Positions 8,051-41,471 of a stretch of 64,000 nt of DNA are shown piece after piece. The notes under the pieces were generated by a model. It did no database searches. It was given only the letters and a program-made list of their open reading frames with translations, and was not told the origin of the DNA. A program made the translations under genes and the position numbers. Within the stretch, counting starts at the first letter, position 1; each line of letters starts with the position of its first letter. The DNA comes from Isurus oxyrinchus. Lineage: Eukaryota. The stretch covers positions 2,418,001-2,482,000 of the forward strand of contig JANJGN010000052.1 of the NCBI GenBank assembly GCA_026770705.1. Reading direction: 5' to 3'.

Positions 8051-8090
8051 ATGGTCGGGAAATCTTACTTCCTCCTGTCACTTCTCCAAG
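8051..8090 (+). CDS. Gene A leader exon (MVGKSYFLLSLLQ-)
   Basis: Acceptor ttcacag|8011; ATG 8051; CAAG|gtaat. Confidence 0.8.
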
Positions 8091-9171: not shown

Positions 9172-10030
9172 GTAAGTGCTGTGTTATAATTACTCACCAA
9201 TTCACATTCAACACTCAATGGGAAATAACACAAACTGTGACATTTACATATTAACACAAAACACAGTTTATTATAACACACTGTCTGATTCTCAATAACC
9301 TGGTGATAGCTTCCAGTTCAGTCCTAAAGCAACCTCTAATACTCACTTTAATATCAATGATGAAAAGCATTAACTGTATTATCAGGTTATCCATTCCCAT
9401 CAATCTCTCCTGTCCTGTTTAAAAGTCTGACGTATCGATAAAAGAAAGATGTGCATTTCTGCAGCGCAATTTACCACCTCAGGAGGATCCAAATCCCTTC
9501 ACAGCCAATGAAATTATTCCTGAATTGTAGTCACAGATGTTAAACACAGCAGGCAGTTTGTGCACAGCAAGATCCAACAAACCACAAGGTGATAAATCAC
9601 CCAGATCACTGAGGAAATGAGAGGCCAGTGAACCCTAACCTCTGGTCTGATGAAGAGTCATACGGACTCGAAACGTTAACCCTGGCTTCCTCTCCACTGA
9701 TACTGTCAGATCTGCTGGGCCTTTCCAGCAATTTTTGTTTTTGTTTCAGATTTCCAGCATCCACAGTATTCTGCTTTTAACTCCAATCTCTGGTCTGAGC
9801 CTCTTCTCTCATCCAGTGTTCTCAATTCACATGTCTCGGAGTGAACGTGTATTAAGCTGAGAGACAGAAACACTACTGCCAAAGAGCAAGAAAATCTTTC
9901 CTGATCATTGTAACCTCTCAGTTCTGATATCATCCTTGTAAAAGTGCTTTCTCTTGTGGGACTGTGATTTCTATTTGAACTGATGCTTCACGTTATATTT
10001 CTCTAAAAGGATCCATTCTCTGTCTGTTAG

Positions 10031-10327
10031 AATTCACAGATAAACCCATGATATTCCCTGCTGAAATTATTGCAGGAAAGCGTGTGGATGTAAGCTGCAC
10101 CTTCAATACAACGTGCAATGGAACAGCAGCACCTGTCTTAACCTGGGACACTCCCACTGACGTACCTGGATCAGTCTCAAACACTGTAACTCAGCATGGT
10201 GTCACTCTGACCTATACTTCTGTTCTGACCCTGATCCCATCACTCAAACACCACGGACACAATCTCAGCTGCAGAGTGAGATATCCATCTGTTTCATCGG
10301 AGCGGACCCTTGTACTAACTGTGCAAG
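10031..10327 (+). CDS. Gene A C2-set exon (domain 2), open frame
   Basis: ag|...FTDKPMIFPAEIIAGKRVDVSCTFNTTCNG...LSCRVRY...LVLTVQ G|gtaag; 297 nt; extra BC-loop Cys typical of Siglec domain 2. Confidence 0.8.
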
Positions 10328-10650
10328 GTAAGTACGGACACCCTTCATTCTACATCAGCACTCCCTCAGTGCTGACCCTCTGACAGTGCAGCCCGTTCTC
10401 AGTATCCACATTCTCATGCCTCTCAAAGTGCTTCACAGTCGATAGAAGTTAATTGATCTTTATTTGATTATTGCTGAATGAAGAGACAAGCTGTCTAAAC
10501 TTTACATCTCGCACACACCATTCTCCATGGCAACACCGCCACCTATCAGAGACCACTTGCCAACCAATCAGCACTCTCTTCCCATTAAGTATAAATTGTT
10601 GTTCACTTTCTGTCGGTAATCCTGTGAACGGGGTTCTTGATTCCCTCCCT

Positions 10651-16548: not shown

Positions 16549-16588
16549 ATGATCGGGAAATCCTACTTCCTCCTGTCACTTCTCCAAG
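16549..16588 (+). CDS. Gene B leader exon (MIGKSYFLLSLLQ-)
   Basis: ATG 16549; CAAG|gtaat. Confidence 0.8.
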
Positions 16589-19500: not shown

Positions 19501-22500
19501 ACACAAGTTACAATAACTATCTTATACTCTCATGTTCACACTAAGTACACAGTCGATGTAAACCAATAGACGACCTGTGGTCAGGGACACCACATTCTGA
19601 AAGCAAGTGGCAGAGCCCACTTGAACCAAATTCTATGTCTCATCTGTCCCCAGACGCTTGTTGCACTGTGAGCCAACCAGTCTCACTGAAAAGCTTCTTT
19701 CATATGAGGGTTTCCAATCTCCACTCTCCAAGAACTCACTTTGGAATCTTCTCCAACATGACACTTTCACTCAGGCACCTTCCACAAGGGTCCACTTTCA
19801 CTATTTCAAACTCTCCTTCCCATGTTCCTGCCCCCTGGATCGCCACGTGCATTCAGCCTTCCTTCCACGCCCTGTCTCTCCAATGCTCAGCCGTGTCAAT
19901 GGAACACCATGGCTTCACATGGCCGTAGTAATGAGTCACCAACCTGTGGTGTCTCCTAGGATCTTCTGGCTTCTCACAAGCCTATTTTGCTTTAGGCCTG
20001 TGTCCTGCTGCTTTCTCCCTTTATGCTTGAAGCCTTCTTCTGCTCCTCACTCTTAACTTCACTTAACAGGGCCTTTTCCAGATTTGACTAGAAGGTTTTC
20101 TTGGGCCCTTTCTCCTGTTCCACTCGATAGTTTTGACTTCTTCTTTACTTTGGGACTGACTATCTGTCCCGCTCCTTTGCTGCTTCTCCTGGCAACTCCT
20201 TTCAACAGAACTGAAAGTACTTTTCTGTTTTTTTCTGTCTCTGTGGGTCCTTCCCTCTGCATCACTGTTGCTAGGCAACAGCACAGTTTCTTATGCCTTG
20301 TATTTGTTTTGACTTCCCTTCAACAGTCATAAAACCTCAATGGAATGCTGGCTTCTTTTTAACTCAAGTTCCCCCTTTTCTCAACACCCAAATACAGAAA
20401 TACAAACTAAACTTGAACTTAAAGATAGACCTTTTGCCTAACACACACAAATACACATAGAACTTACTTAAGCGAACACCAGTTCCTAAAAATCACATGA
20501 CACACTTCCCCTCGAGTGATGTCATGCTGCTGTCCCTGAAAGGCATATTACAACAGTGTTATCACTTGGCAGGTGATGTGTGCCAGGCAGACCAAGTCCC
20601 TGAGAGAAACCTGGTCACACTATCATAATGATTTTGCAATTTGTATTTATTATGAGATGTGTGCACTTAATTCAGAAGCAATAACTCCACCAATACCTTT
20701 AGAGATTTAAAACAATAAATTAACATATTTGTCATCAAAATAAAAGATTTCAAGCACATACATAATGACAATGACTGCTATCATAACTCCTAAAATTCCT
20801 AATTAACCTGACTCCCAGTTACAGTCCCTTTAAGGCAACAGACCAAAAATAGATGTTAGATTTAAAACAAAATCAGCAAGTTAACCCAATGCCCCGGACA
20901 GTGGAATTCCAAATGCATTGTCCCCAACTTCAGTTCTGTTGGAGAGCAGGCTTGTGCACAAACAGGGTCCTGAGGACCATGAACCAATGTAGAATGAACT
21001 TTTCCGCTTTTGTGTCCAGGATTCTCTTCCATCTGGTGTGATACCTTGTGGAGTTCATTGTGTGTCCTGTAGATGCTCCACACTGCAGCCACTGTGCCCC
21101 AGTGATGGAGGGGGTGGATATTGAGTCTAGTGGATCAACAAAACATCCAGAGTTAAATATTGATATTTCTCTCCCCAGTTGGATTGTCACAAGAGTGGAA
21201 AGGTGACACTCCACGAGAGGTGACAGCGCAGGAAGGTTCGTGTGTACAGATTCCATGTCATTACAGTTATCCATCAGATTTGGTAAAGAAACCACAGGTC
21301 GGAATCTGGAAAATGAGAAGATACATACAGAACAAATGGTCTAAATGGTCTATAGCCTTTCACTCCAAGGGTCACAGTCGCGAGTTATCACAGTTCCACC
21401 ATCGGACCCGGCTGTCTGGAGACCTGAAAGATGGCGACTGTTCCCTGATTATAAACAACATCAGACGGGAAGATGCAGGATCTTATTTTTTCACGATAAA
21501 ATTTGGCAATGGTCCGAGACATAACGTTTCCCCTGAAACCCAGCTTCACGTTTCTGGTAAGTGCTGTGTTATAATTACTCACCAATTCACATCCAACACT
21601 CAATGGGAAATAATAGTGTTTGATTTGCTTGTTTTTTGGCCGTGTTAACCAGCGTCACTATTTTTAATGATTTGTCTATTTCTGCTCCCAGATCCATGAG
21701 CTTATTGTGTGTGATTGAATCCACATCATAGCTGTAACGTAAACCGAGCTGAGGGGTGATGACACCTCCCCCCTGAGTGAAGTGTCTCCTCCCCACTACA
21801 CCTTCCACCCCTCACACTGTCCGTGTAAACCCCCGTCCCATCTCCAGCCTCTCTTTCCCCTCCAAAGTCCTTGAACGTGTTTCCATCTCCCGAATCCGGT
21901 TCCATCTTTCCCGGAACTCCATGTTTGAATCCCTCCAATCAGGTTCCCACCCCAGCCACTGTGCTGAAACAGCTCTTATCAAGGTCACAAATGGCATCCT
22001 GTGTGACTGTGACAAAGGTCAACTTTCCCTCCTCGTCCTTCTCGATCTGTCTGCAGCCTTTGACACGCTCGACCACACCATCCTCCTCCAACCCCTCTCC
22101 ACTGTCGTCCAGCTGGGTGGGACTGCTCTCCCCTGGCTCCATTCTTATCCATCTCATCGTAGCCAGAGAATCACTTGCAATGGCTTTGCAGCATCATCTG
22201 AACAGTATTAGTTTTCACCTGTCCACTGAGGATCCCCAGCTCTACCTCACCACCACCTCTCTCGACTCCTCCACTGCTGCTAAATTATCAGGCTGCTTAT
22301 CCGACATCCAGTACTGGATGGGCAGAAATTCCCTCCAATTAAATATTGGAAAGACTGAAGCCATTGTCTTCATTCCTCGATCCAAACTCTGTTCCCTCGC
22401 TACCAACTCCATTCCTCTCCCTGGCAGCTCTCTGAGATTGAAGCCAATCTGTTCACAGCTTTGTTGTCCCATTTGATCCTGAGATGAGCTTCCGGCCTCA

Positions 22501-25500
22501 TATCTGCGCCCTCACTAACACTGTCTATTTCCACCTCCATAACGTCGTACGACTTCACCCTGTCTCAGCTCATCTGCTGCTGAAACCCTCATCCACGCCT
22601 TCATTACCTCCAGACTCGACTGTTCCAACACATGCTCTACACTCCATAAACTTGAGGCCATCCAAAACTGCTGACCACGTCCTTACTCACACCAAGTCCC
22701 GTTCCCTTATCACCCGCTCTGCTCGATGACCGAGACTGGCTCCTGGTCAAGCAAAGTCTCAATGTCCAAATTTTTGAATATTTTTCCTCCCTATTACAGT
22801 AATCTCCTCCTTTATCTTCATCCACGGCAACATTCCCTATCGCAGGAGCCTCCTCCAGTCCCTACAACCCTCTCTATCTCAGGAGCCTCCTCCAGTCCCT
22901 ACAACCCTCCCTATCTCAGGAGCCTCCTCCAGTCCCTACAACCCTCCCTATCTCAGGAGACTCCTCCAGTCCCTACAACCCTCCTATCTCAGTACTCTCT
23001 TCCAATCCCGAAAACCATTCCTATCACTGCAAACTCCTCCGGACCCAACACCCCTCCCTATCTCTTTAACCTCCTCAAGCCCCGATAACCCTCGCGATAT
23101 TTGTAGCCTCCTCCAGTCCTAACAACCTCCACTATCTCTGCAAACTCCTCCAGACCGAATACCTCTCCCTATCTCTGTAAGCTGGTCCATCTCTTACAAC
23201 CCTTCATATTTCTGTAACCTCCTCCAGCCCACTACAACCCTCCCTATCTCTGTAACCTCCTCCAGTCCCTAAGAGTTTCCTTCATCTCTGTAACTCCTCC
23301 AGCCATTATAACCCTCCCTATCTCTGTAGCCTCCCTCAGCCCCAGCCACACTCCATATCTATGTAACCTCGTCCTGCCCCTACAACCCTCCCTATCTCTG
23401 TAACCCCATCCTGCCCCAAAAACTCCCCCATCTCTGTAAACTCCTCCAGTCCCTGCAACCTTCCCTACCTCTGAAACCTCCACCAGCCTTTCCAACCCTC
23501 CCTACCTCTGCAATCCGTCCAGCCCCTACAACTCTTCCTATCCCTGTAAACTCCTCCTGCCCCTAAAACCGTCTCTGCCCTTGCAGCCTCCTCCAGTCCC
23601 TTCACGTTCCCCATCTCCATAAACTCCTCAAATCCCTATAGCCCTCCCTATCTCTGCAACCTCCTCCAGGTCCTACCACCCTCCCTATCTGCGTAACCTC
23701 CTCCAGTATCTACAGCCCTCCCTATCTCTGTTACCTCCTCCAGCCCCCACAAACCTCCCTATCTGTGTAACCTCCTCCAGCCCCTGATGGAAGGTGGGTC
23801 GAGCGGGTCAGTCACTTGCATGTTTATTCTGCAGCTTTAATATTTTAAGAAGGTAAGAATGTAGGAACATAAGAAATAGGGACAGGAGCAGGCCATTCGG
23901 CCCCTCCAGCCTGCTCTCACTGATCTGGTTGCGGCCTTAACTCCATTTTCCTGCCTGTCCCCCAAACCCTTGACTCCCTTGTCGATCAAAAACCTGCCTC
24001 ACTCAGCCTTGAGTCTATTCAATGGCCCAGCCTCCACTGCTCTCTGGGGAAGAGAATTCCACAGGCTAGCGCCCCTCTGAGAGAGGAAATTCCTCCTCAT
24101 CTCAGTCTTAGATGGGAGAGCCCTCATTCCGAAACTGTGCTCCCTGGTTCTAGATTCCCCCACGAGGGGGAAACATCCTCCCAGCATCCACCCTGTCAAG
24201 CCCCCTCGGAATCGGATATGTTTCAATAAGGTCACCCCTCATTCTTCTAAACTCCAATGGATACAGGCCCAACCTGCTCACCATTTCCTCACAGGACAAA
24301 CCCTTTAATCCCAGGAATCAGCCCAGTGAACCTCCTCTGAACTGCCTCCAATGCAACTCTATCCCTCCCTAAGTAAGGAGACCAGAACTGTACACACTGC
24401 TCCTGATACAATCTCACCAACGCCCTGTGCAGCTGCTGCAAGACTTCCCTCCTTTTATACCCCATCCCTTTGCAATAAAGGCCAACATTCCACTTGCCTT
24501 CCTCATTCCGTGGTGTTCCTGAATGCTGACTTTCTGTGATTCATGTACAAGGACACCCAGATCCCTCTGTACTGCATTCTGCAGCCTGTCTCCATTTAAA
24601 TAATATCCTGTTTTTCTATTCTTCCTGCCAAAATAATTTGTTGCCATTCTCCTCAGTATTGACCATCCCCCCAATTCAGCCTCATCAGTAAATTTTGAGT
24701 CTAGTGGATCCACAAACCATCCAGAGTTAAATATTGAGATTTCTCTCCCCAGATAAACCCTCACAAGAGTGGAAAGGTGACAGTCCACGAGAGGTGACAG
24801 CACAGGAAGGTTCGTGTGTACAGATTCCATGTCATTACAGTTATCCATTGTGTCCGGAAAACCAACCGCGAGGTGGAGTCTGGTTTAATAATGAGAAACA
24901 GATTCCCTGGGCTCCCATTGCCTTTCACTCCAAGGATCACAGTCACGAGTTACCACGGTTCCACCATCGGACCCGGCTGTCTGGAGACCTGAAAGATGGC
25001 GACTGTTCCCTGATTATAAACAACATCAGACGGGAAGATGCAGGACCTTATTTTTTCAGAATAGAATTTGACAATGGTCCGAGCCATAACTATTACCCTG
25101 TAACCCAGCTTCACGTTTCTGGTAAGTGCTGTGTTATAATTACTCACCAATTCACATTCAACACTCAATGGGAAATAACACAAACTGTGACGTTTACATA
25201 TTAACACAAAACACAGCTAATTATAACACGCTGTCTGATTCTCAATAACCTGGTGATAGCTTCCAGTTCAGTCCTAAAACAACCTCTAATACTCTCTTTA
25301 ATATCAATGATTAAATGTATTGACTGTGTCCATCAGTGTTATCAGGTTATCCACTTACATCAATCTCCCTAATCCTGTTTAAAATTCTTACATATCAACA
25401 AAAGAAAGATTTGCATTTCTATAGCGCCTTTCACCACCTCTGGACATCGCAAATGGATTCACAACCATTGAAATAATTCTTGAAATGTAGCCCTTGTTGT

Positions 25501-28500
25501 AATATAGGAAACACAGCAGCCAATTTGTGCACAGGAAGCTCCCAGAAACAGCAATGTGATCAATAACCTGATCATCTGCTTTAAATGCCGGTTCAGTGAT
25601 TGGTTCAAATGGATTCTCTCCTGCTGGGAACTGGATAGAATTTAAATCTGGCAGATTTCGGAGAAAGTAACAAGCCAGTGTGTCAGGAACTGTGAGCTGA
25701 TCCCCCACCCTCACCCGGGATTGTCAATTCAATTGTCTCAAAGTGGAAGTGAATTCATCTGAGTGACAGAAACTCCACTAAGTCTGAAAATAGGAAAGTC
25801 TCTCCTGATCGTTGTAATCTCTCAGTTCTGATATCATCCTTGTAAAAGTGCTTTTTCTTGTGGGACTGTGATTTCTATTTGAACTGATGCTTCACGTTAT
25901 ATTTCTCTAAAAGGATCCATTCTCTGTCTGTTAGATTTCACAGATAAACCCATGATATTCCCTGCTGAAATTATTGCAGGGAAGCGTGTGGATGTAAGCT
26001 GCACCTTCAACACAACGTGCAATGGAACAGCAGCACCTGTCTTAACCTGGGACACTCCCACTGACGTACCTGGATCAGTCTCAAACACTGTAACTCAGCA
26101 TGGTGTCACTCTGACCTATACTTCTGTTCTGACCCTGATCCCATCACTCAAACACCACGGACACACTCTCAGCTGCAGAGTGAGATATCCATCTGTTTCA
26201 TCGGAGCGGACCCTCGTATTAACTGTACAAGGTAAGTACTGAAACCCTTGATTCTATATTAGCTGTAATAGGTTACAATGTGCAGAGCAAGATCCCACAA
26301 ACATCACTGGGTTGAAGACAAAACAGGTCCTTTTTTATTAGCGATATTGACCAGGGAGAGCTCTTCCTGTATTGAGCCTTGGGATTGTTTATGCCTACCT
26401 GATAGGGCAGAGGGGGCCAATGTTGAACTTAAAAGACAATATAGGATAATATAAATATTGTCTTCATTGATGTCAAAGATTTTGGGGGAGATGTAGTATA
26501 AAAGTTTAATATTAACAATGTAAATAGATAGTATTTATCATCAGTTACTCAAGGTCACATGAGAATAGAACACGGAGAGAGATAGTTCTATAGATACCTA
26601 GGTACATAGAAACTAGGAGCAGGATTAGGACATTCAGCCCTTCAAGCCTTCTCCGCCATTCAATATGATCATGGCTGACCCTCTATCTCAAAGCCTTATT
26701 CCCGCTTTCTCTCCGTACCCTTTGATGCCCCTAATATCAAAATATTTATCAGTTTCTTTCTTGAATACACTCAGTGACCCGGCCTCCACAGCCTCTGTGA
26801 TGGAGAATTCCACAGATTGACCACCCTCTGAGTGAAGAAATGTTTCCCTATCTCAGTCCAAAATGGCCTGCCCTGTATCCTGAGATTGTGGCTCTTGGTT
26901 TTAGACTCCCCAACCAAGGGATGCATCCTCCCTCCATCCAGTCTGTCTATCTCTGTTAGAATTTCTTACGTTTATTCAGGTCTCCTCTCATTCTTCTAAA
27001 CTCTAGTGAATACAGACCCAGTCGTACCAATTCTCCTCATACGACAGTCCTGCCTCCCCTGGTATCAGCCTAGAGAACCTTCTCTGCACTCTCTCGACGG
27101 CAAGTCTATCCTTTTTTAGGGAGGGAGACCAAAACGGCACGTAGTACCCCATGTGCAGTCTCACCAAGACCTTGTATAACTGCAGTAAGACATCCCTACT
27201 CCTGAACACAAATCCTCTTGCAATGAAGGACAACATACCATTTGCCTTCCGAATTACTTGCTGCACCTGCCTGTTTACTTTCATTGGCTAGTGCACAAGG
27301 ACACCCAGATCCCTTTATACATCCACATTTCCCATTATATCACCATTTAAATAATACTCTGCCTTTCTGTTTTTCACACCAAAGCCTACAATGTCACATT
27401 CATCCACATCATCTGCCATGTGTTTGCCCACACACACAACTTGTCTAAATCGCCTTGAAGCCTCTTTACATCCTCCTCACAGCTCACACCCTTACCCAGC
27501 GTTGTGTCATCAGAAAACCTGGAAATATTGCACTTGGCTCCTTCACCCAAGTCATTTAAATATATCGTGAATAGTTAGGTCCCAAGCACGGATCGCTGTG
27601 GTACACCACTAGTCACCGCCTGCCACTCAGATAAAGACTAATTTATTCTGACCCTCTGTTTCCTGTCTGTCGACCAATTCTCAATCCATGCCAGTAAATT
27701 ACCCCCAATCCCATGGGCTTTAATGTTGCGCACTAGCCTCATGTAGGACCTTATCAAAAGCCTTCTTGAAATCTAAAAACACCACATCCACTGGTTATCC
27801 CTTATCTATTCCACAAGTTACATCCTCAAAATCTCCAGTAGATTAGTTAAGCATGATTTTCCTTTCATTAACCCATGCTGACTTTGTCTAATCCCATTAA
27901 TGCTTTCCAAGCGTTCCGTTAGCACACCTTATATAATAGGCTCTAGCGTTTTCCCCATGTTAGACTAACTGGTCTGTAATTCTCTGATTTTTCTCTCCCT
28001 TCTATTTTAAATAGTGGAGTTACAATTGCCACCCTCGAATCTATAGGAACTGCTCCAGAGCCTATAGAATTTTGGAGGATGACCACCAGTGCTTCCAATA
28101 TTTCCAGGGTCACTTCCGTTAGTCTCCGGGATGTAGATTTTCAGGCCCTGGGGACTGTTCAACCTTTAACCCATTAATTTCTCCAGCTCCATTTTTTAAA
28201 ACTAATCCTGATTATCTTCAATTCCTCCCTCTCACTAGACACTTGGTTCCCTAACATTCCTGGGAAATTATTTGTGTCCTCTTTTGTGAAGACAGAACCA
28301 AAATATATGTTCAGTTCTTCTGCCATTTCTTTGTTTCTCATTAGAATTTCCCCCATTTCTGACTGCAAGGAACCTACATCGGTCACTGCTAATCTTTCTC
28401 TCTTCACATATTTATAGAAGCTTTTACAGTTGGTTTTTACGTTCCCTGCAAGTTTAATCCCATGTTCCATTTTCCCCTTCTTGATCAATCTTTTTGTCCA

Positions 28501-31500
28501 CTTTTGCTGAATTCTAAACTGCTCCCAATCCTCAGCATTGCTGCTTCCCCTGGCAATTTTATGTCTCCTCTCTGGATCTAATACTATCCCTAATTTCTTT
28601 TGTAAGCCCTGGTTGAGCACCATTTCCTGATTTATTTTTACGCCAGACAGAAATGGATAATTGTTGTAGCAAATGCTTCAGCCTTATCTTTTGCCCTGAT
28701 GTGCTGGGCTCCCCCTTCATTGAGAATGGGGATATTTGTGGATTCCCCTCCTCCAGTGAGTTAATTGTCCGTTACCATTGGATACGAGCATTAGTGGACT
28801 GTATTAGACCATTATCGAAAATGAAAGCTGGACTCCAGTATGGCCTCACTATGATGGATATGACAACTCGATTTCCAGAGACCATCCCTTTAGGAACAAT
28901 TACAGCTAAAGTAGTAATAGGGAAGTTAACCCAATTTTTTACCCATTATGGATTACCGCTGGAGATCCAGTCAGATCAAGGTTCCATCTCTATGTCTTAA
29001 AATTTTCCGAACATAATGAGTAATTTGGGTATAAAACAGTTAAAGTCCACAGCATATCATCCATAGACACAGGGATCTTTAGAGAGGGACCAACAAACCC
29101 TCAAAACAATGATTGAAGCTATTGTCATGATCTCCCCATGACTGGGACAAAGGACTGGATTTCTTGTATTTCCCACATGAGATTCACCAACTGAATCGGC
29201 AGGTTTTAGTCTTTTTGGAATAACTTATGGACACGAGATAAGAGGCTGTTTGAAATACATCAAAGAAAGATATTCCGGACAGAGGGATGAATCCTCTATT
29301 TCAGATGATGTGTCCATGTTTCAGGAACGGCTCATGGGAGCCTCCAAAGTGGCACAAGAACATCTTATAGTTTCTCAAACAGAAATGAAGGAATGGGGCA
29401 GACAGGCAAGCTGTGACCCGAACATCACAACCAGGGGGATGACGTGTTAGTATCATTGCCTTGGCAGGGGGAGCCTCTGAAAGCGCGGTTCAGTGGTCTC
29501 CACAAGGTAATTAGGAGGGTTGGTCAAGTAAATTATTTGATAGACACCCCAGATTGTAGAATAAAGAATCGGCTGTGACACATCAATATGTTAAAACGAT
29601 ACCATCGTAGGGAGGGAGGTAAAAAGGAGCAGGTATTTCATTTCCAACCAGATTCTGCATAGATTACAGAAAGGTTAATGCAGCAATAAAACCAGATTCC
29701 TACCCAATCCCCCGTTTAGAAGATGGTATTGACGAGGTTGGCAGTGCCATGTTCCTTACTGAGATAAATTTGTTGGTAGTGGGGGGTGTTCGTGACCATC
29801 AGTGTGGAAGGGTTAGGTTTACAGGTTACACAGACCAGACACACACCAACAGACACACACACACATGTAAGCACGCACATTCACACGCACACGCGCACAC
29901 ACACAACACACACACGCACACACACACACGCACACACACACACACACACACACGTAAGCACGCACATNNNNNNNNNNNNNNNNNNNNNNNNNNNNNNNNN
30001 NNNNNNNNNNNNNNNNNNNNNNNNNNNNNNNNNNNNNNNNNNNNNNNNNNNNNNNNNNNNNNNNNNNNNNNNNNNNNNNNNNNNNNNNNNNNNNNNNNNN
30101 NNNNNNNNNNNNNNNNNNNNNNNNNNNNNNNNNNNNNNNNNNNNNNNNNNNNNNNNNNNNNNNNNNNNNNNNNNNNNNNNNNNNNNNNNNNNNNNNNNNN
30201 NNNNNNNNNNNNNNNNNNNNNNNCACTCAGTGCTGCACTGGAGTCTCGGTGTCAGCTCCGATTCTGTGTTGAAGGAAGGTAAACTCCGGATCAACAAGAC
30301 CCTGAATTGGATGGAGCAACCTCCTTAACAGAGAATTGTAGATTTACCCCTCAGTGCTCCATCGATCAAATATAATTCATTGCCTGTCAAGCCCTTGGGG
30401 ACATCCTGAGGATGTGAAAGGCAGTTTCTTTAAATCTGGATGGGCAGCGTCTCTGGTGGGAGAATGCTCCTGCAGTGTGACAGTTTACATAGGCAGTGCC
30501 CATTGTAAATGTGACATAGGAACTTATCTTGAGAGAAGGTGCCTAGAAATGCACACAGGCATCAGTTACAGCGAGATGATACAGGAAGTTTTGCTGTGCA
30601 CTGTGTTTGCTCACATTAAAATCTTTATATATTTTTAGATGCACCACAGAATCTCTCAATTACTTCTCTTGATATGATTAACGCTTCATCGATCAATATA
30701 ATTGCGGGGAATTCTGCAGTGATAATCTGCTCTGTCGAGAGCTTCCCAGCTTCTAACCTGACGTGGCGACATCTTAATGTCCCAATGAACAGAACAAGTT
30801 CCAACAATGAGCTGTGGTTGGTGATTCCTCACGTTACATCCAGGGACACTGGAGATTATCAGTGTGTGGCAGAGAATGAACATGGAGCAGTGGAGGGGTT
30901 CATAACCATCACTGTGGAATGTGAGTGTGGAGATACATTTGTTTGTTTGTTGTCTCCGTGGTCTCCGTGGAGCCATTGGGATCGTGTTGTTTTTAATCCA
31001 GTTTTCTTCAATCCTCGCTCAGTCCACGTTATCCACACATCCAATTTTTCCTCTCCCTTTCTGTTTTTGGTCTCAGTTTCTCCTTCAATGGTTGTGAGGA
31101 CAAGGCTGTCAGGTCTTCGTTTCCAATCTCCGTACTTGACGACCTTTCTCTCTCTAACTGTCCTGAACAACCCTTTTAATGGCTGAACGTCTCCTCTTGA
31201 TCTAAGCCACTCATTGGTCTTTCTGTCCATCCAGCTGATTCTGAGCATCTGGCAGCATCTGTGGAGAGAAAGACAGGGTTAGCGTTTGGAGTCCGTAAGA
31301 CTCCTCTTCAGAGCTAAAGGGAAGTAGACATGTGGTGAAATATATCCTGTCTAAGGGGGGGCGATGGGACAGGTGGAGCTGGATAGAAAACCAGCGATAG
31401 GTGGAGGCAATGGAGAGATTGTGAAAAATGTCATAAACAAAAGGTCAAAGGGTTGTTAACAGTGGTGGTATTGGATAAAGGAGGTGCTAATGGTGACATT

Positions 31501-34500
31501 AAGCAGAGTGTGATAATGGGCGGACCAGGGTAAGCACTCTGGAAAGAGACAGATGGCCCTCGTGGGGGTGTGGCAGGGGGGAGGGGACGGTGGAGGGAAT
31601 AAAGATCGAAAATAGACTAAAATCTGCGGATAAAACAATCAATAAAAATGGAAATGAATTTCAAATAATAATAATAAAAATAAGTGGAAAACAGTTAACA
31701 AAAAAAACAATTAAAATGAATACATTAAAAAAGGGCTCAAAAAGCAGTGAAGATCGAGGAGAGAGTTCATGATCTGAAATTGTTGAATTCAATATTCAGT
31801 CGGGAAGGCTGTAAAGTGCCAGGTCGGAAGATGAGGTGTTGTTCCTCCAGTTTGTGTTGGGCTTCACTGGAACAATGCAGCAGGCCAAGGACGGACATGT
31901 GGGCATGAGAGCAGGGTGGGGTGTTAAAATGGCAAGCGACAGGGAGGTCTAGGTCGTTCTTGCAGACAGACTGAAGGTGTTCATCAGAGCGATCACCCAG
32001 TCTGTGTTTGGTGTCTCCAATGTAGAGGAGACCACATTGGGAGCATTGAATGCAGTAGATTAAATTGAAGGAAGTCTGCGTGAAGCGCTGCTTCACCTGG
32101 AAGGAGTGTTTGGGTCATTGGACAGTGAGGGGGGAGGAAGTAAAGGGGCAGGTGTTGCACCTTCTGTAAATACATGGGAAGATGTCATCGGAGAGGGTTG
32201 AGGTGCTAGGGGTGATGGAGGAGTGGACCAGGGTGTCCTGGAGGGAATGATCCCTGTGGAATGCCAACGGGGTGGGGGTGAAGGGAAGATGCTTTTGATG
32301 GTGGTCAGATTTTGTCCAAAGGAGGTGAGAAATGAGGGAGGGAATTCCAGAGGTTAGGATCCAGGCAGCTGAAGGCACGGCTGCCAATGGTGGAGCGATA
32401 GGAATCGGGGGAAGGTCAAGAGGCTGGAATTGGAGGTGCATCGAGATCTCGGAGGGTTGTAGAGGCTGGAGGAGTTTACAGAGATAAGGAAGGTTGTAGG
32501 GGCTGGAGGAGGTTACAGAGATAGGGAGGGTTGTAGGGGCTGGAGGAGGTTACAGAGATAGGGAGTGTTGTAGGGGCTGGATGAGGTTACAGAGATAGTG
32601 AGTGTTGAAGGGTCTGGAGGAGGTTACAGAGATAGGGAGGGTTGTAGAGGCTGGAGGAGTTTACAGAGATAGGGAGGGTTGTGGGGGCTGGAGGAGGTAA
32701 CAGAGTTAGGGAGGGTTGTGGGGGCTGGAGGAGGTTACAGAGATAGAGAGGGTTGTGGGGGCTGGAGGAGGTTACATAGATAGGGAGGGGTGTAGGGATG
32801 GAAGGTGGTTGCGGAGTTAGCGAGTTTTATAGGGGCTGTAGGAGGTTACAGGGATAGGGACGGTTGTGGGGGTTGGAGGAGGTTACAGAGATAGGGAGGG
32901 TTATAGGTGCTGAAGGAGGTAACAGAGATAGGAAGGGTTATAGGGGCTGGAGGAGGTAACAGAGATAGGGAGGGGGTAAGGAGGGATTTGAAACGATGTG
33001 AATTTTAAAATTGTGGCATTGTCGGACCGGGAGCCAGTGTAGCTCAGTGACCAACAGGGAGTAATATGTGAACAGGACTCGGTGTGAGTTAGGACATGGG
33101 GACAGCAGAGTTTAGGATGAGCTGATGTTTATGGAGAGTGGAAGATGGGAAGTCGGGCAGGAGAGTGTTGGGATAGTTGAGTGCAGAGGTAACAAAGGCA
33201 GGAATGAGTGTTTCAGTGTGAAGATTCCATCTTACGCTCTAACTTTGCTATGACGTTGTCTCATTGTTGTCCTTACCTCCTCAGATAAGCCGGAGATTTC
33301 CCAGCAGTCGGAGTGCACTCGGAGATCAGAGGGGGTCACCTGCGTCTGTGTGACCACCTCCAACCCACCGGGAGACCTCACCTGGCACCTGCCCAGTGCC
33401 AACATCAGTGGTAACCAAACACACGGAGATTTTGTGTCGTGGCAGGTCAGAGATGGGCATCTGGTGACTGGTTCCCTCACCCTGATGAGACCTCAGGATG
33501 AGGGGGGAGTGATTGCATCCTGCTCGGTTCAAAACCCACATGGGGAAGCCATGTTCAAGGTGTATCTGTGGGTCAAAGGTGAGAGACTCGCTCAGGATCG
33601 ATCTCCACTCAGCTGGATTGATCCCTAAACTCGAGAATTCCCTCCCTCAACCTCTCCACCTCTCTCTCTACCTCCTCTAAGATGCTGTGTACAACTTCCC
33701 CCTTTGACCAAGCTTTGAATCACCTGACCTCATGTGACAATGGCAACACTTGGTCAAATTGGAGCCAGGCCGTTCAGGGGGTGATGTCAGGAAGCACTTC
33801 TTCACACAAAGGGGAGTGGAAATCTGGAACCCTCTCCCCCAGATAAGCTGCTTCATTGGGTGCAAGACAGAAAGCTTTGACAAAATGTCCTTTCTCAGCA
33901 ATACTCAGGTTCTCCTCCCAAACGACGAAATATTATATATAAACATTACATAGATTACATCGAGAAACATTATATATAAATATTACATAGATTACATCGA
34001 GAAATATTATATATAAATATTACATAGATTACATTGATAAATATTATATATAAATATTACATAGATTACATCGAGAAAAATTATATATAAATGTTACATA
34101 TATTACATTGCTAAATATTATACATTAATGTTATAGGGATCACATTGATAAATATATATAAATGTTAAATTGATTACATCGAAATGCAAGACTCGATAAC
34201 CAATGAAGCAGTTTCGAAGTGAGCTCACTGTTGTCATGTAGGAAACGCAACAGTTGATTTGTACACAGCAAGATCCCACAAACAACAGCGTGAAATTGAG
34301 GTGATAATTGATTATTTTAGTGAGGTTATTTGATACATATATATATAGAAATTACATATATAATGTGGGTCACTAATGACCCTTAAGGGAGGGAAACCTG
34401 TCCATTTTAACAGGTCTGGGTGTATATGTGACTCCAGTCTCAGACACCATCATGGTTAACTCTTACCTGCCCTCTGAACTGGTCTCCCAGTTTGGGACAA

Positions 34501-37063
34501 GCCAGTGGTTCAGGAGGAAGACTCCCCACCAGCTTCTCAAGGGGAAACTAGGGATGGACAATAAATGTCAGCATTGCCCGAGAATGAGTATTTAAACACT
34601 GAGTGAGTGTATCGCTTCTCGAGATACATCGGAGCATCATTGTAAACCTGTAGTGCAGTAATTAATGGCTGTTTTTACAGGTAGAGACTCCAGTAAATGG
34701 ACAGTAGGATTGTTCACGGCTGGGATCATGTTGAGTGTTTTCCTGGCTGGAATCTTCATCTTCATCTGTGTGAGAAAGTAAGTCTGAAGATTTAACTTGA
34801 TTTTAATATAAACATTTGTTGAGGACTAATTGGACAGTTTTTACAAAGGGCCAGCACAGGCACGATGGGCTGAGTGGCTTCCTCCTGAGCTGTGAGATTT
34901 TAAATTCTTTAATCAAATGTGACTGTCACTGGTGAGGCCGTTATTAACTTGCCCATCTCTAATTGCCCTTTGAGAAGGTGGTGGTGAGCTGCCTTCTTGA
35001 CCCGCTACAGTCCATGTGGTGTAGGTACACCCACAGTGCTGTTAGAGAGGGAGTTCCAGGATTTTGACCCTGCGACAGTGAAGGAACGGTGATATATTTC
35101 CAAGTCAGGATGGTGAGTGACTTGGAGGGGAACTTCCAGGTGGTGGTGTTCCCATGTGTCTGCTGCCCTTGTCCTTCTAGATGGTAGAGGTCGTGGGTTT
35201 GGAAGGTGCTGTTGAAGGAGTCTTGCTGAGTTGCTGCAGTGCATCTTGTAGATGGTACACACACTGCTGCCACTGTGTGTTCATGGTGGAGGGAGTGAAT
35301 GTTTAATGTGGTGGATGGGGTGTCGATCAATCGGGCTGCTTTGTTGTTGATGGTGTCGAGATTCTAGATTCTGTGCTTTGTGCAGAAGTGATTTAAAGAG
35401 ACAGTCCCAGTCATTGGTGTAAGTTACAGTGGGCTCTGTGTCTGTGCTGCACTGACTCTCTGCTATATGATAACCACAGTGTGATATTGTGTTATTGCAG
35501 GAGAAGGACAGCAATGGAGGAGAGAGTTTCAGGGAGCAGAGACATTGCATTGACCCTCAGTTCACTCTCTGTGAACCACCAGGTACAGGAGCTGTTTACA
35601 CTCACTCCAAAGCTTCAATCTCAGTGTGTAGACAACACATGTCCCAGATTCCCAGCCCAGTTACCCACTGATTTGTACCTGTGGAGTCAGCAATGGTTCA
35701 GTATCATGCTGTCTCTCTGTTATGACACAGCAACTGGTAAAGGCTGTTGTTTAAAATCCCAGAGGAAACTTTAAACAACTGTCATAACCTATATTTCCCA
35801 GTGGAATGTTTGAGATGCAGCTCTAAATTCAGGAATAAGAGCACCAGTTCTCGACATGGGTGTTATATCAAACTACATGAGACATTTATTAATTTACACA
35901 AGTTAAACATATGCACATGGCTACAAGCGAGTATTATCATAACTTTTTAACAAATTCCCAAACTAATCTCCTCTAAGACAACCCATAGACTTTAAGCAGA
36001 CACCAGGCAAAGCATTTTCACCTCACAAATTCCAAATGAGGTTCCTTTCACTTTGGTTCCTTTGCAGACAGATGTAGGCTTACAGCTGCTTTGATGTTAC
36101 AAGCCTCTGCTCTGCACACACAAAACTGCTCAAGTTATACCCAATGCTTCTCTTTGAATGTAAATTCTCATTGAATCATCAGGACCTTTGAACTCCACCC
36201 TTCATCGTATCAATTTTATTAGTAATATAAACATTGATTCGTTTAAGATTTCACTCCCAGACATTGAATGCTCTGTTTAAAAATGGAAATTACCCCTTTA
36301 CCTCTTTGTTTACATCTCAAAACTACTTGACATCAAAGTACCCGGACTGGCTGGCTTTAATCCAATTAAAACACTCACACACACACACCCACAGACTAAA
36401 CCTCTGTTTAAAAAGACAATTTCCAATTACATTACATACATTAATAGATTAATAACACCCTATCTCTATCCCTTTCTCTCTTTCTCTTCCCTCTCATCCT
36501 CTCTCTGATTACAAGGTTCTTGTTAATGAGCCTCACGTCAGGTACCTGAATGCAGAATCCAAGCCGGCACTCGCCAGAGACATTACCGAGGGAGTGCGAG
36601 ACTGACAGAGGGTCAGTCCTGAGGGAGTGCTGCGCTGTCGGGGGTCAGTACTGAGGGAGTGCTGCCCTGTCATAGGTGGTTTCTTTTTTATGATATGAGA
36701 GAGAGAGTAAAACCAACTGAGACACGACTGACACTAATGAGGCTGCACAATAATTTAACCCTATCAGTGCCAGTAAATGATGTGAGGATGTCTTCTGTTT
36801 CCATTTCTCTGTAGGGTAAACAGAACGTGCTGATTACTGAGCCCCGGAACACAACCAGAGACACAACTAGCGAGGGGGAGACCCCAGCTCCCCGGGGTCT
36901 CTCTGAAGGTCCAGTGGGAGGTGGTGCTGGACATGGGAACCCTGACAATCCCAACGACCTTCTCTACGCCAATCCTCAAGTCTTCAGGGTGCGCAGTGGT
37001 GATGGGACTGTCCACAAGGAAGAGGAGACGGAATACGCACAGATCAGATTCAAGCGAAACTGA
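16549..37063 (+). CDS. Gene B (spliced): Siglec-like receptor L-V1-V2-C2-C2-C2-TM-cytoplasmic tail, about 695 aa
   Basis: Exons 16549-16588, 21179-21556, 24753-25121, 25935-26231, 30639-30920, 33285-33578, 34681-34777, 35501-35582 and 36815-37063 all have GT-AG boundaries and compatible phases (sum 2088 nt). Confidence 0.75.
17590..19260 (-). mobile_element. Internally deleted Gypsy-type LTR retrotransposon (gag with Zn-knuckle, pol remnants)
   Basis: ORF 18934-19269 (gag N-terminus) and 18478-18798 ending CPAFHQSCKACGRKGH; pol-like FNNIGSFKG near 18030 and a C-terminal TRSRHNSRLPLRFRD near 17650. Confidence 0.7.
19261..20945. mobile_element. LTR-like dispersed repeats (related to 35718-36457, 39515-40347, 43610-44110, 58685-59580)
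   Basis: TGTT...AACA ends at 19261/20555; shared AT-rich motifs with the other copies; no clean TSD seen. Confidence 0.4.
21179..21556 (+). CDS. Gene B V-set domain 1 (essential Arg replaced by Thr)
   Basis: VGLSQEWKGDTPREVTAQEGSCVQIPCHYSYP...GDCSLIINNIRREDAGSYFFTIKF...QLHVS; Siglec V-set pattern (SCVxIPC, GDCSL, DxGxYFF); ACG at 21493-21495. Confidence 0.88.
21750..22770 (+). mobile_element. L2-like LINE RT fragment
   Basis: RPISSLSFPSKVLERV...ETALIKVTN...LLVLLDLSAAFDTLDHTILL; WMGRNSLQLNIGKTE. Confidence 0.8.
22845..23785. repeat. 37-bp C-rich minisatellite (CCTCCTCCAGCCCCTACAACCCTCCCTATCTCTGTAA)
   Basis: Direct reading. Confidence 0.85.
23860..24640 (-). mobile_element. CR1-like LINE 3' fragment
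   Basis: QRDLGVLVHESQKVS; SRTREHS...MRRNFLSQRGASLWNSLPQRAVEA. Confidence 0.8.
24753..25121 (+). CDS. Gene B V-set domain 2 (essential Arg retained, extra BC-loop Cys)
   Basis: DKPSQEWKG...SCVQIPCHYSYPLCPENQPRGGVWF...DAGPYFFRIEFDNGPSHNYYPVTQLHVS; AGA at 25058-25060; extra TGT at 24851-24853. Confidence 0.88.
25935..26231 (+). CDS. Gene B C2-set exon
   Basis: 297 nt, ag|ATTTCACAGAT...CAAG|gtaag; near-identical to the A and C copies. Confidence 0.88.
26600..28655 (-). mobile_element. CR1-like LINE fragment (~2 kb)
   Basis: KANGMLSFIARG...LLQLYKVLVRLHMGY; NCKSFYKYVKR...EMAEELNIYFGSVFTKED. Confidence 0.85.
28785..29775 (+). mobile_element. Gypsy (Gmr1-like) remnant with integrase upstream of RT
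   Basis: Integrase core LVDCIRPL...DMTTRFPETIPL...YGLPLEIQSDQGS followed near 29650 by RT motif RFCIDYRKVNAAIKPDSYPIPRLEDGIDEVG. Confidence 0.75.
30639..30920 (+). CDS. Gene B Ig domain (282-nt I/C2-type exon)
   Basis: DAPQNLSITSLDMINASSINIIAGNSAVIICSVESFPASNLTW...DTGDYQCVAENEHGAVEGFITITVE; ag|...T|gtgagt. Confidence 0.88.
30980..31260 (-). mobile_element. RTE-clade LINE 3' fragment (second copy ~55420-55630)
   Basis: MLRISWMDRKTNEW...LVLTTIEGETE...W resembles the RTE C-terminus. Confidence 0.6.
31255..32305 (-). mobile_element. Penelope-like element fragment
   Basis: NLIYCIQCSQCGLLYIGDTKHRLGDR (GIY-YIG) in ORF 31767-32096. Confidence 0.8.
32445..32975. repeat. 37-bp minisatellite, G-rich orientation (inverse of 22845-23785)
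   Basis: GGAGGAGGTTACAGAGATAGGGAGGGTTGTAGGGGCT units. Confidence 0.85.
33285..33578 (+). CDS. Gene B membrane-proximal Ig exon (MAG domain-5 / Siglec last-domain type)
   Basis: YKPEISQQSECTRRSEGVTCVCVTTSNPPGDLTW...VTGSLTL...IASCSVQNPHGEA; P-x6-7-C...CxC...SNP pattern of the MAG/Siglec juxtamembrane domain; 294 nt, phase 1-1. Confidence 0.85.
33930..34180. repeat. AT-rich ~37-bp tandem repeat (TATTATATATAAATATTACATAGATTACATCGAGAAA)
   Basis: About 6 degenerate copies. Confidence 0.8.
34681..34777 (+). CDS. Gene B TM exon, uncharged (GRDSSKWTVGLFTAGIMLSVFLAGIFIFICVRK)
   Basis: tttttacag| ... AGAAA|gtaagt; phase 1-2. Confidence 0.85.
34930..35370 (-). mobile_element. LINE 3' fragment (same family as 59580-60640)
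   Basis: CTIYKMHCSNSARLLQQHLPNPRPLPSRRTRA... tail. Confidence 0.7.
35501..35582 (+). CDS. Gene B cytoplasmic exon 1 (RRTAMEERVSGSRDIALTLSSLSVNHQ)
   Basis: ttattgcag| ... CAG|gtacag; phase 2-0; paralog at 56972-57053. Confidence 0.8.
35718..36457. mobile_element. Solo-LTR-like insertion specific to gene B intron
   Basis: TGTTA...TAACA ends; similar to 39515-40347; absent from the matching intron of gene C. Confidence 0.5.
36815..37063 (+). CDS. Gene B terminal exon: degenerate ITIM (LLYANP) and ITSM (TEYAQI)
   Basis: ctctgtag|GGTAAACAG...; ORF 36827-37063; AATAAA at 37605-37610. Confidence 0.85.
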   Translation, partial: GKQNVLITEPRNTTRDTTSEGETPAPRGLSEGPVGGGAGHGNPDNPNDLLYANPQVFRVRSGDGTVHKEEETEYAQIRFKRN

Positions 37064-41431: not shown

Positions 41432-41471
41432 ATGATTCGGAAATCTTACTTCCTCCTGTCACTTCTCCAAG
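41432..41471 (+). CDS. Gene C leader exon (MIRKSYFLLSLLQ-)
   Basis: accATGatt; CAAG|gtaat. Confidence 0.8.

What the first reader, a model, noticed from the sequence alone, without database searches (positions are those of the whole stretch)
21179..25121. Tandem double V-set Siglec: Arg-less V1 capping an Arg-bearing V2 (convergent with Siglec-12)
Seen: two intact V-set exons with no promoter or leader module between them, both phase 1-1. V1 starts VGLSQ (end of the signal peptide), whereas V2 has this start rewritten to DKPSQ, like the FTDKP inter-domain linker. V1 lost the essential Arg (YFFT) and the G-strand aromatics (HNVS); V2 keeps YFFR and HNYY. Established: two V-set domains are rare among Siglecs (primate Siglec-12). 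Inference: V1 binds a non-sialic ligand or masks V2.
Basis: partly seen in the sequence, partly recalled or inferred. Interest (0 to 1): 0.8.

Follow-up and report, generated by a model that had tools for sequence, protein, structure and literature searches.

The report
Shark Siglec gene with two lectin domains
A shark immune-receptor gene of the sialic-acid-lectin (Siglec) family carries two lectin-domain exons in a row, the outer one without its key sugar-binding arginine, and such many-domain Siglecs turn out to be common in sharks and rays.

Summary
Two intact Siglec-type V-set exons lie at 21179-21556 (V1) and 24753-25121 (V2). Both are flanked by AG and GTAAGT, and both are phase 1-1. 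V1 has Thr where CD33 and Siglec-5 have the essential Arg; V2 keeps the Arg. The real leader exon is at 16549-16588, and there is none between V1 and V2.

The two exons are a roughly 495-bp duplicated unit, separated by 3.1 kb of retroelement and tandem-repeat DNA.

RNA-derived contigs show three junctions: leader to V1, a V-exon end to a V2-type exon, and V2 to C2 (GT..AG). No V1-to-V2 joint specific to this gene was among the rows shown.

The architecture is not rare in this lineage. RefSeq models with 2-4 Siglec V-sets exist in at least ten shark and ray species, and 27 of 157 proteins examined have two or more. V2 belongs to an old "internal V-set" type, marked by a BC-loop cysteine (29 of 41 internal domains against 4 of 142 first domains) and an xxPSQ start. 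The only feature peculiar to this gene is the Arg-less, fast-changing outer domain. The polarity is opposite to chimpanzee Siglec-12.

The scan's first readers noted the same architecture on two other pieces of this genome. A follow-up on a seven-V-set gene also found many-V-set Siglecs to be widespread. The ligand or masking idea remains untested.

The parts
16549..16588 (+). Leader exon of gene B: MIGKSYFLLSLLQ plus one base, with donor G|gtaata (phase 1)
   Evidence: tblastn with the N-terminus of P0002 matches 13 of 13 residues. Sequence and donor read. Its last 12 bases are the loose end of an X1 contig that continues into V1.
21118..21613 (+). First copy of the duplicated unit: 61 nt of intron, V1, then 57 nt of intron
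   Evidence: Self-blastn matches 21118-21613 to 24692-25178 at 86.6%. Alignment of four copies. The flanks differ at 4 of 61 and 1 of 57 bases.
21179..21556 (+). V1: first-type V-set exon, 378 nt, phase 1-1, Thr at the essential-Arg column, no BC-loop Cys
21557..24752 (+). Intron between V1 and V2. It holds a reverse-transcriptase fragment (21777-22208), a 37-bp tandem array (22834-23785) and other repeats. It has no leader.
   Evidence: Pfam RVT_1, E 1.2e-08. TRF finds 25.8 copies. Repeat copies lie elsewhere in the window. No leader by homology or by scan.
24692..25178 (+). Second copy of the duplicated unit
24753..25121 (+). V2: internal-type V-set exon, 369 nt, phase 1-1, Arg kept, BC-loop Cys (YPLCP), start DKPSQ
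   Evidence: It is 96.7% identical to domain 2 of Carcharodon P0176.
25935..26231 (+). First C2-set exon, starting DFTDKP
   Evidence: Pfam C2-set_2, E 2.9e-09. GT..AG joint 25120/1 to 25934/5 in X1, X6 and X7. 94% identical to P0167.
30641..30919 (+). Ig exon (Ig_3 / I-set). Limits come from tblastn only.
33266..33583 (+). Membrane-proximal Ig exon. Limits come from tblastn only.
   Evidence: 91.5% identical to P0167. Weak Pfam Ig_3 match.
34680..34778 (+). Transmembrane exon. Limits come from tblastn only.
   Evidence: 97% identical to P0167 residues 457-489
36776..37060 (+). Cytoplasmic tail exon with LLYANP and TEYAQI. The 5' limit is not fixed.
   Evidence: 74% identical to the tail of P0167

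Best explanation
Gene B (about 16.5-37.1 kb, + strand) is one member of a large elasmobranch family of CD33/Siglec-like receptors. Many members carry several V-set lectin domains in series. Its most likely mRNA runs leader, V1, V2, C2, two further Ig domains, a transmembrane segment and a tail with tyrosine motifs. V2 is the conserved internal-type V-set. It keeps the Arg and the G-strand aromatics. It has an extra BC-loop cysteine that can take the inter-domain disulfide from V1, just as the C2 domain's extra cysteine takes the one from V2. It also has a proline-containing start that serves as a linker. V1 is the outer, fast-evolving domain. In this paralog it has lost the canonical sialic-acid contacts: Arg to Thr through two base changes in one codon, and YY to VS. 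The receptor can therefore bind sialic acid, if at all, only through the inner domain. The outer domain either binds something else or acts as a spacer or shield. Shown here: the exon anatomy, the residues, the family-wide architecture and the individual splice junctions. Inferred: the joint inclusion of both exons in this gene's mRNA, the disulfide pairing, and all ligand statements.
For: Intact ORFs with identical strong splice sites, phase 1-1.

V1 keeps the ancestral upstream intron and V2 keeps the ancestral downstream intron plus the C2 exon.

There is one leader, 4.6 kb upstream of V1, and none between the V exons.

RNA-derived contigs carry four signals (checked). An X1 contig carries the last 12 bases of the leader exon in front of V1. 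An X1 contig carries a V-exon 3' end (TTCACGTTTCTG) fused to a V2-type exon start. The V2-to-C2 GT..AG joint is present in 3 of 4 runs. In X1 the exon bins run at 127-839 against 20-75 in the intron bins free of repeats.

Close RefSeq models join a V1-type and a V2-type domain in one protein: Carcharodon P0167 and P0170, Cetorhinus P0002, P0169 and P0168. P0167 matches gene B exon by exon at 91-97% downstream of V1.

27 of 157 proteins have two or more full Siglec V-sets.

In the tree V1 sits with the first domains of lamniform double-V proteins, and V2 sits in a clade of internal domains from three shark orders (SH-aLRT 92 for each).

The BC-loop Cys is present in 29 of 41 internal V-sets and in 4 of 142 first V-sets.

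The cysteine count is 3 + 4 + 3 for V1 + V2 + C2, which is even only if V2 has a V-set in front of it.
Against: No contig was shown that spans V1-specific and V2-specific sequence of this gene. The 21556-to-24753 joint is not among the 15 of 68 joint rows printed.

The contig that shows a V-end joined to V2 starts AEPSQ, not DKPSQ. It therefore comes from another individual, species or paralog.

All runs were Logan contigs, labelled RNA only by a guess. Contigs cannot show absence or abundance.

X4 and X7 have no depth in the V1-specific bin 21273-21463.

No annotated protein matches V1 at more than 75% identity, so no curated model of this very gene was seen.

V1's loss of the Arg and aromatics, and its 9:0 excess of amino-acid changes over V2, also fit an exon drifting out of use.
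Confidence: 0.72

Rival explanations
1. V1 is a decaying or optional exon. The working receptor is leader-V2-C2..., and V1 is skipped in most transcripts or is on its way to pseudo-exon status.
For: V1 lost the Arg and both G-strand aromatics. In the 3' half, V1's lineage has 9 amino-acid changes and V2's has none. V1 is only 70-75% identical to its best relatives, while the rest of the gene is 91-97% identical to P0167. X4 and X7 show no depth in the V1-specific bin.
Against: The ORF and both splice sites are intact and identical to V2's. There is a leader-to-V1 junction contig, and V1-specific depth in X1 and X6. The 9 changes exceed the 3.4 expected from neutral drift (Poisson P about 0.008; post hoc, small counts). 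V2's start DKPSQ places charged residues directly after the hydrophobic leader. V2's extra Cys would be left unpaired without a V-set in front of it (inference).
Confidence: 0.13
2. V1 and V2 are mutually exclusive alternative exons, giving two single-V receptors (V1-C2 and V2-C2) from one promoter.
For: Both exons are phase 1-1 with identical splice sites, so either alone stays in frame. The loose end at 25934 (TTCACGTTTCT) cannot tell which V exon is the donor.
Against: The closest gene models carry both types in tandem. An RNA contig joins a V-exon end to a V2-type start. V2-type hallmarks are tied to the internal position across the family. No known mechanism would enforce exclusivity across a 3.2-kb intron (inference).
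Confidence: 0.08
3. The two V exons belong to two separate genes, with an unrecognised promoter or leader in between.
For: The window holds several Siglec-like genes in tandem.
Against: There is no leader by homology or by scan in 21557-24752. Homology to the paralogs upstream of V2 stops 57-61 nt before the exon, while the paralogs' leaders lie 0.7-4.6 kb upstream of their V exons, outside that stretch. The interval is retroelement and tandem repeat. No C2, transmembrane or tail exons follow V1 before V2.
Confidence: 0.02

Closest known systems
Elasmobranch multi-V-set Siglec-like gene models in RefSeq. The closest are Carcharodon carcharias 'sialic acid-binding Ig-like lectin 13 isoform X2' (P0167) and 'lectin 12 isoform X2' (P0176), and Cetorhinus maximus 'lectin 12' isoforms (P0002, P0169, P0168).
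   Same: The same leader (MIGKSYFLLSLLQ). A first-type V-set followed by an internal-type V-set with YPSCL/YPLCP. A DFTDKP-C2 domain. The same transmembrane segment and tail type. V2 is 92-97% identical, and C2, Ig and the transmembrane segment are 91-97% identical.
   Different: All of these models keep the Arg in both V-sets. V1 here has Thr and is only 70-75% identical to their first domains. Their internal V-set mostly starts VGLSQ or AEPSQ; here it starts DKPSQ.
Primate Siglec-12 / human Siglec-XII
   Same: [quoted passage not shown]
   Different: In chimpanzee Siglec-12 the terminal V-set is the Arg-dependent binder, and in humans both V-sets lack the Arg. Here the outer domain lacks it and the inner one keeps it. 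The shark duplication is shared by three shark orders, so I infer an independent origin; orthology to the primate gene was not tested. RefSeq's 'lectin 12' names for the shark proteins are automatic names.
Arg-mutated single-V Siglecs (the 'Roman-numeral' Siglecs of primates)
   Same: Replacement of the essential Arg in an otherwise intact, expressed Siglec is a recurrent event (PMC6288428, passage and table read).
   Different: Those proteins have no second, Arg-bearing V-set behind the mutated one.
Ray and carpet-shark multi-V models with Arg-less internal domains (Hypanus P0003/P0155, Mobula P0164, Hemiscyllium P0172, Rhincodon P0175)
   Same: A mix of Arg-bearing and Arg-less V-sets in one chain.
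   Different: In the ray models and Hemiscyllium P0172 the first domain keeps the Arg and the internal ones carry Lys or Ser; in Rhincodon P0175 both V-sets carry Lys. Among the 27 multi-V proteins, none has an Arg-less first domain followed by an Arg-bearing second one.

Membership tests
Siglec (I-type lectin) family | Amino-terminal V-set Ig domain of Siglec type | tested here: met
   Pfam V-set and Ig_CD22 both score above their cut-offs for V1 and V2. The best PDB relatives are the V-sets of Siglec-5, Siglec-7, CD33, Siglec-8, Siglec-10, sialoadhesin and MAG, E 6e-15 to 1e-10.
Siglec (I-type lectin) family | Essential Arg on strand F | tested here: met
   Met for V2: 'yffRie' lies on Siglec-5 'yffRve' and Siglec-7 'yffRme'. 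Not met for V1: 'yffTik' lies on CD33 'yffRme'. The gene as a whole keeps one canonical site.
Siglec (I-type lectin) family | Siglec cysteine pattern: two Cys on strand B, one on strand E, and an extra Cys in the next domain | tested here: met
   'egsCvqipC' and 'dCsl' align with 'eglCvlvpC' and 'nCsl' of Siglec-5 and CD33. The C2 exon has three Cys. The pairing itself is inferred from recalled Siglec structures and was not tested.
Siglec (I-type lectin) family | C2-set domains, a transmembrane segment and cytoplasmic tyrosine motifs | tested here: met
   C2-set_2, E 2.9e-09, and Ig_3 / I-set. The transmembrane segment and the tail with TEYAQI come from tblastn with P0167. The membrane-proximal motif reads LLYANP, which does not fit the ITIM consensus as I recall it.
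Siglec (I-type lectin) family | Binding of sialic acid | not testable with these tools
   Needs recombinant protein and glycan arrays.
Elasmobranch multi-V-set Siglec-like group (RefSeq models) | First-type V-set after the leader, then an internal-type V-set with a BC-loop Cys and an xxPSQ/VGLSQ start, then DFTDKP-C2 | tested here: met
   The Cys is in 29 of 41 internal V-sets against 4 of 142 first V-sets. V2 falls in the internal clade (SH-aLRT 92).
Elasmobranch multi-V-set Siglec-like group (RefSeq models) | Both V exons on one mRNA | tested here: inconclusive
   The leader-to-V1, V-end-to-V2-type and V2-to-C2 junctions were each seen separately in contigs. No single record across V1 and V2 of this gene was shown.
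Primate Siglec-12 (orthology) | Descent from the same V-set duplication | not tested
   No mammalian sequences were put in the tree. I infer an independent origin from the shark-wide internal V-set clade and from the statement that all other Siglecs have one V-set (PMC7876704).

The most novel reading that the evidence does not exclude
V1 is not decaying. It was remodelled by positive selection on its F-G face, with 9 amino-acid changes against about 3.4 expected from neutral drift, including a two-base Arg-to-Thr codon change. On this reading it has become a binding site for a non-sialic (for example microbial or protein) ligand. It sits on top of a conserved sialic-acid-binding V2 that is disulfide-linked to it, so one inhibitory receptor reads two different ligands through two stacked lectin domains.
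Probability: 0.15. Interest if true: 0.6.

Novelty: new member of a known kind. Interest (0 to 1): 0.35.

Why it matters
[quoted passage not shown] Four searches for shark or cartilaginous-fish Siglecs found no description of multi-V-set Siglecs. Public shark and ray annotations nevertheless hold many of them. Stacking lectin domains is therefore an old and common solution in cartilaginous fish. This gene adds a natural case in which the outer domain has given up the canonical site while the inner one keeps it. That offers a ready-made test of whether inner V-sets can bind sialic acid, and of what an Arg-less outer V-set does. For this one locus the result is modest: an ordinary member of that family with one unusual residue pattern.

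Tried and rejected
1. I first read a conserved ORF about 140-200 nt upstream of V1 (MNQCRMNFSAFVSRILFHL, 20979-21036) as the leader. I dropped it when relatives showed the leader to be MIGKSYFLLSLLQ and tblastn placed that at 16549.

2. The word-index search with V1 alone gave only 3 proteins of 139-178 aa, with best identity 71%. It found no fragment of this gene.

No orthologous DNA was compared, so no codon model across species could be run.

4. The first ab initio leader scan was too strict: it missed 3 of 3 real leaders. I replaced it.

5. dN/dS over the whole exons is about 1 (0.64-1.1), which says little. In the 3' half, nonsynonymous change compared with synonymous plus intron-flank change gives an odds ratio of 2.0, Fisher P = 0.17, not significant. 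Only the V1/V2 asymmetry (9:0, P = 0.004) and the Poisson excess stand, and both are post hoc.

6. I considered the idea that the DKPSQ start was copied from the C2 linker, since both share the nine bases GATAAACCC. Relatives have AEPSQ, AKPSK and DVPSQ at this place, and DKP is two base changes from the AEP form seen in X1. A micro-conversion is therefore not needed, though it is not excluded.

7. I did not run structure prediction. The tool returns no coordinates, so it could not test the Cys-Cys pairing, and joining V1 to V2 for a fold was barred.

8. The by-sequence look-up in the scan's findings was blank.

9. Supplementary files of papers were not opened. Supplementary file 9 of the whale-shark paper (PMC8455134) lists Siglec gene families and might bear on prior description.


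Full report
THE OBSERVATION

The stretch holds two open V-set exons on the + strand. V1 is 21179-21556 (378 nt) and V2 is 24753-25121 (369 nt). Each lies behind ...ctctccccAG and in front of GTAAGT, and each begins and ends in phase 1.

Both pass Pfam's cut-offs for V-set and for Ig_CD22. Their best solved relatives are the V-sets of Siglec-5, Siglec-7, CD33, Siglec-8, Siglec-10, sialoadhesin and MAG.

In the printed alignments V2's YFFR Arg lies on the Arg of Siglec-5 'yffRve' and Siglec-7 'yffRme'. V1 has Thr on the Arg of CD33 'yffRme' and Siglec-5 'yffRve'. That this Arg is the essential one I take from PMC6288428 (passages) and from recall. V1 reads HNVS where V2 reads HNYY.

THE GENE AROUND IT

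The window is a cluster of Siglec-like genes on the + strand. It holds four V-exon copies:
- V1;
- V2;
- an intact copy at about 44930-45295 (gene C).

Relatives found with V1 begin MIGKSYFLLSLLQ-VGLSQEW. tblastn places that leader at 16549-16587 for gene B, 8051-8089 for A and 41432-41470 for C, plus an inverted copy at 499-461. The exon ends ...CTCCAAG|gtaata, in phase 1.

Inside 21557-24752 there is no leader by homology. A scan that recovers all three real leaders also finds none there: 0 candidates, against 161 on the + strand of the whole window.

Using Carcharodon P0167 as a guide, the rest of gene B lies as follows:
- C2 at 25935-26231 (94% identity);
- an Ig exon at 30641-30919;
- an Ig exon at about 33266-33583 (91.5%);
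- a transmembrane exon at about 34680-34778 (97%);
- a tail at about 36776-37060 (74%).

Only the leader, V1, V2 and C2 limits were fixed to the base.

ANATOMY OF THE DUPLICATION

Self-comparison and a four-way alignment show three things:
- V1 keeps the upstream intron shared with genes A and C, from 20960.
- V2 keeps the downstream intron and the C2 exon shared with them, up to 26300.
- V1 and V2 share only a unit of about 495 bp (21118-21613 against 24692-25178, 86.6% identity).

The 3.1 kb between them holds a reverse-transcriptase fragment (Pfam RVT_1), a 37-bp tandem array of 25.8 copies and other repeats that recur in the window.

The identity is mosaic. The intron flanks differ at 5 of 118 bases. 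The 3' halves of the exons have dS 0.045, while the 5' halves have dS 0.32. I read this as gene conversion between two old exon types, not as a young duplication. That reading is an inference.

TRANSCRIPTS

The single run search gave 22 runs, all kept as Logan contigs and labelled RNA only by a guess. I laid four of them, from four studies, on 20700-26400.

- A GT..AG joint 25120/1 to 25934/5 (V2 to C2) is present in X1, X6 and X7, so these three runs do hold spliced RNA.
- In X1 a contig that fits from 21177 onward carries GTCACTTCTCCA in front. These are exactly the last bases of the leader exon, 16575-16586.
- Another X1 contig that fits V2 from 24756 carries TTCACGTTTCTGCTG in front. That is the common 3' end of a V exon (present at 9160, 21545, 25110 and 45284), followed by CTG. 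It reads ...HVS-AEPSQ....
- So a V exon is spliced to a V2-type exon in that animal. Because that exon starts AEP and not DKP, the contig comes from another individual, species or paralog.
- X1 has depth 127-515 over the V1 bins and 349-839 over the V2 bins, against 20-75 in repeat-free intron bins.
- X6 has depth 86 in the V1-specific bin 21273-21463. X4 and X7 have none there.
- The V1-to-V2 joint itself is not among the 15 of 68 joint rows printed.

Contigs cannot show absence or level. The tandem mRNA of this gene is therefore well supported but not shown.

RELATIVES

The exhaustive search with V1 found 1037 proteins at E up to 0.001. Seven of the first seven have 2-4 matched stretches. 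Names show them to be RefSeq models, plus one GenBank model. They come from Scyliorhinus canicula and S. torazame, Mustelus asterias, Cetorhinus maximus, Carcharodon carcharias, Chiloscyllium punctatum, Hemiscyllium ocellatum, Rhincodon typus, Hypanus sabinus, Mobula hypostoma and Hemitrygon akajei. Many are automatically named 'sialic acid-binding Ig-like lectin 12'.

I scanned all 263 proteins held, using a profile built from the three window exons. Of these, 157 have at least one full Siglec V-set, and 27 of the 157 have two or more: 17 with two, 6 with three and 4 with four.

The nearest proteins are from Carcharodon. V2 is 96.7% identical to domain 2 of P0176, and V1 is at best 75% identical. 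No protein of this very gene was found. The source is probably a lamniform shark close to Carcharodon, but I cannot name it.

TWO DOMAIN TYPES

I built a quick maximum-likelihood tree from 78 domain rows of 46 proteins that I had tagged with species, plus the 3 window exons. The other 120 domain rows were left out, and the alignment has only 122 columns, so many forks are open.
- V1 joins the first domains of the lamniform double-V proteins (SH-aLRT 92).
- V2 joins a clade of 26 rows made almost wholly of second and later domains from lamniform, carcharhiniform and orectolobiform sharks (SH-aLRT 92).

A cysteine in the BC loop (YPSCL; YPLCP in V2) is present in 29 of 41 internal V-sets. It is present in 4 of 142 V-sets that directly follow a leader. 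Three of those 4 have it at another place in the loop, and the fourth sits in a truncated model.

Internal V-sets start AEPSQ (9), VGLSQ (5), DVPSQ (2), or AKPSK, AEPSK, AGPSQ and others. First V-sets start VGLSQ, AGLAQ and similar. V2's DKPSQ is thus a variant of an old internal-domain start, two base changes from the AEP form seen in X1.

Counting cysteines gives 3 for V1, 4 for V2 and 3 for C2. All can pair only if V2 has a V-set in front of it (sequence; the pairing scheme is recalled from Siglec structures).

WHAT IS PECULIAR HERE

At the Arg column, 179 of 201 domains have Arg, 14 have Lys, 4 Ser, 2 Thr (V1 is one of them), 1 Glu and 1 Gly. In multi-V proteins the Arg-less domains are almost all internal ones, in rays, Hemiscyllium and Rhincodon. 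None of the 27 has an Arg-less first domain followed by an Arg-bearing second one. The V1-type first domains of Carcharodon and Cetorhinus all keep the Arg.

In the 3' half of the exon, V1 and V2 differ by 13 nonsynonymous and 2 synonymous changes. Where gene C's exon agrees with one of the two, V1's lineage has 9 nonsynonymous changes and V2's has none. The split is 9:0 (P = 0.004). Nine is more than the 3.4 expected from the neutral rate of the flanks and silent sites (Poisson P about 0.008). A direct comparison of the rates is not significant (Fisher P = 0.17). These are small, post hoc counts. They favour neither decay nor adaptation with any force, but they do show that V2 is held constant while V1 changes.

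MECHANISM

Most likely (0.72) both exons are constitutive, and the protein carries a stacked V1-V2 head on C2 and Ig stalk domains, with a tyrosine-motif tail. V2 is the only domain with a canonical sialic-acid site. V1, the membrane-distal domain, cannot bind sialic acid in the canonical way. Whether V1 shields V2, binds another ligand or merely extends reach is open.

Rivals:
- V1 is a drifting, often skipped exon (0.13).
- V1 and V2 are mutually exclusive exons (0.08).
- They belong to two genes (0.02; contradicted).

COMPARISON WITH WHAT IS KNOWN

[quoted passage not shown] Chimpanzee Siglec-12 binds Neu5Gc through the Arg of its terminal V-set. In humans the critical Arg is mutated in both V-sets (PMC7876704, passages; PMC6288428, passages). 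The shark gene shares the domain count and the habit of losing the Arg, but has the opposite polarity and, by inference, an independent origin.

Five literature searches were run. Four of them looked for shark or cartilaginous-fish Siglecs or V-set counts. They found only a passing mention of Siglecs in the whale-shark genome paper (PMC8455134, passages) and no description of multi-V-set Siglecs in cartilaginous fish. The library lacks most subscription journals, and supplements were closed, so this is not proof that none is in print. The proteins themselves are already in public annotation.

THE SCAN'S OWN RECORD

First readers noted the same 'tandem V-V with Arg-less outer domain' on two other pieces of this genome (s1-863088, s1-869973; spans 3900 and 3919 letters; not checked by me). 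A follow-up on a seven-V-set gene (s1-868556) concluded that many-lectin-domain Siglecs are widespread in sharks and rays. My reach the same conclusion independently.

VERDICT

This is a new member of a known kind, with one unusual residue pattern. Interest is 0.35.

Noticed in passing
window 461-499 (- strand), within 184-1104: There is an inverted copy of the Siglec leader exon (MIGKSYFLLSLLQ, 13 of 13 residues). It lies inside a block that matches 41747-40844 in reverse at 89.6%. It may be a leader or promoter module of a gene reading off the left end of the window, or a relic.
   Followed up: no
window 21118-21613 vs 24692-25178: The identity between the two V units is mosaic. The intron flanks differ at 5 of 118 bases and the 3' exon halves have dS 0.045, but the 5' halves have dS 0.32. 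This looks like gene conversion tracts between a first-type and an internal-type exon that leave the BC-C' core distinct.
   Followed up: partly
window 24753-24761 and 25943-25951: The nine bases GATAAACCC (counting the phase-1 G) begin V2 and also encode the DKP of the C2 exon's DFTDKP linker. Contigs of run X1 have CTGAACCC (AEP) at the start of their V2-type exon.
   Followed up: partly
window 46676-55400: Gene C carries at least eight near-identical Ig exons of about 93 codons, about 1 kb apart (47426, 48384, 49412, 50463, 51553, 52819, 53872, and a partial one at 55296). Gene B has a single such exon, at 30641-30919.
   Followed up: no
window 8797-9176: The V exon of gene A is split over three frames in tblastn and has in-frame stops, so it is a pseudogene copy. 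Its DNA is 94% identical to gene C over 8574-10359 against 44709-46483.
   Followed up: no
window 22834-23785: A 37-bp tandem array (25.8 copies) lies in the V1-V2 intron, and an inverted relative lies at 32451-32974. The bins over it reach summed contig depths of up to about 211,000 in the runs laid, so it is a very abundant repeat family in these transcriptome contigs.
   Followed up: no
window 36950-37060: Gene B's tail reads LLYANP...TEYAQI, where Cetorhinus P0002 has LLYINV...TEYAQI. The membrane-proximal tyrosine motif no longer fits the ITIM consensus as I recall it.
   Followed up: no
window 20979-21036, 8595-8650, 44730-44790: A short ORF (M[NS]QCRMN[FL]S..SRILFH..) is conserved in the intron about 140-200 nt upstream of the V exons of genes A, B and C. 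It is not the leader. The reason for its conservation is unknown, and it may simply be young paralogous intron sequence.
   Followed up: partly
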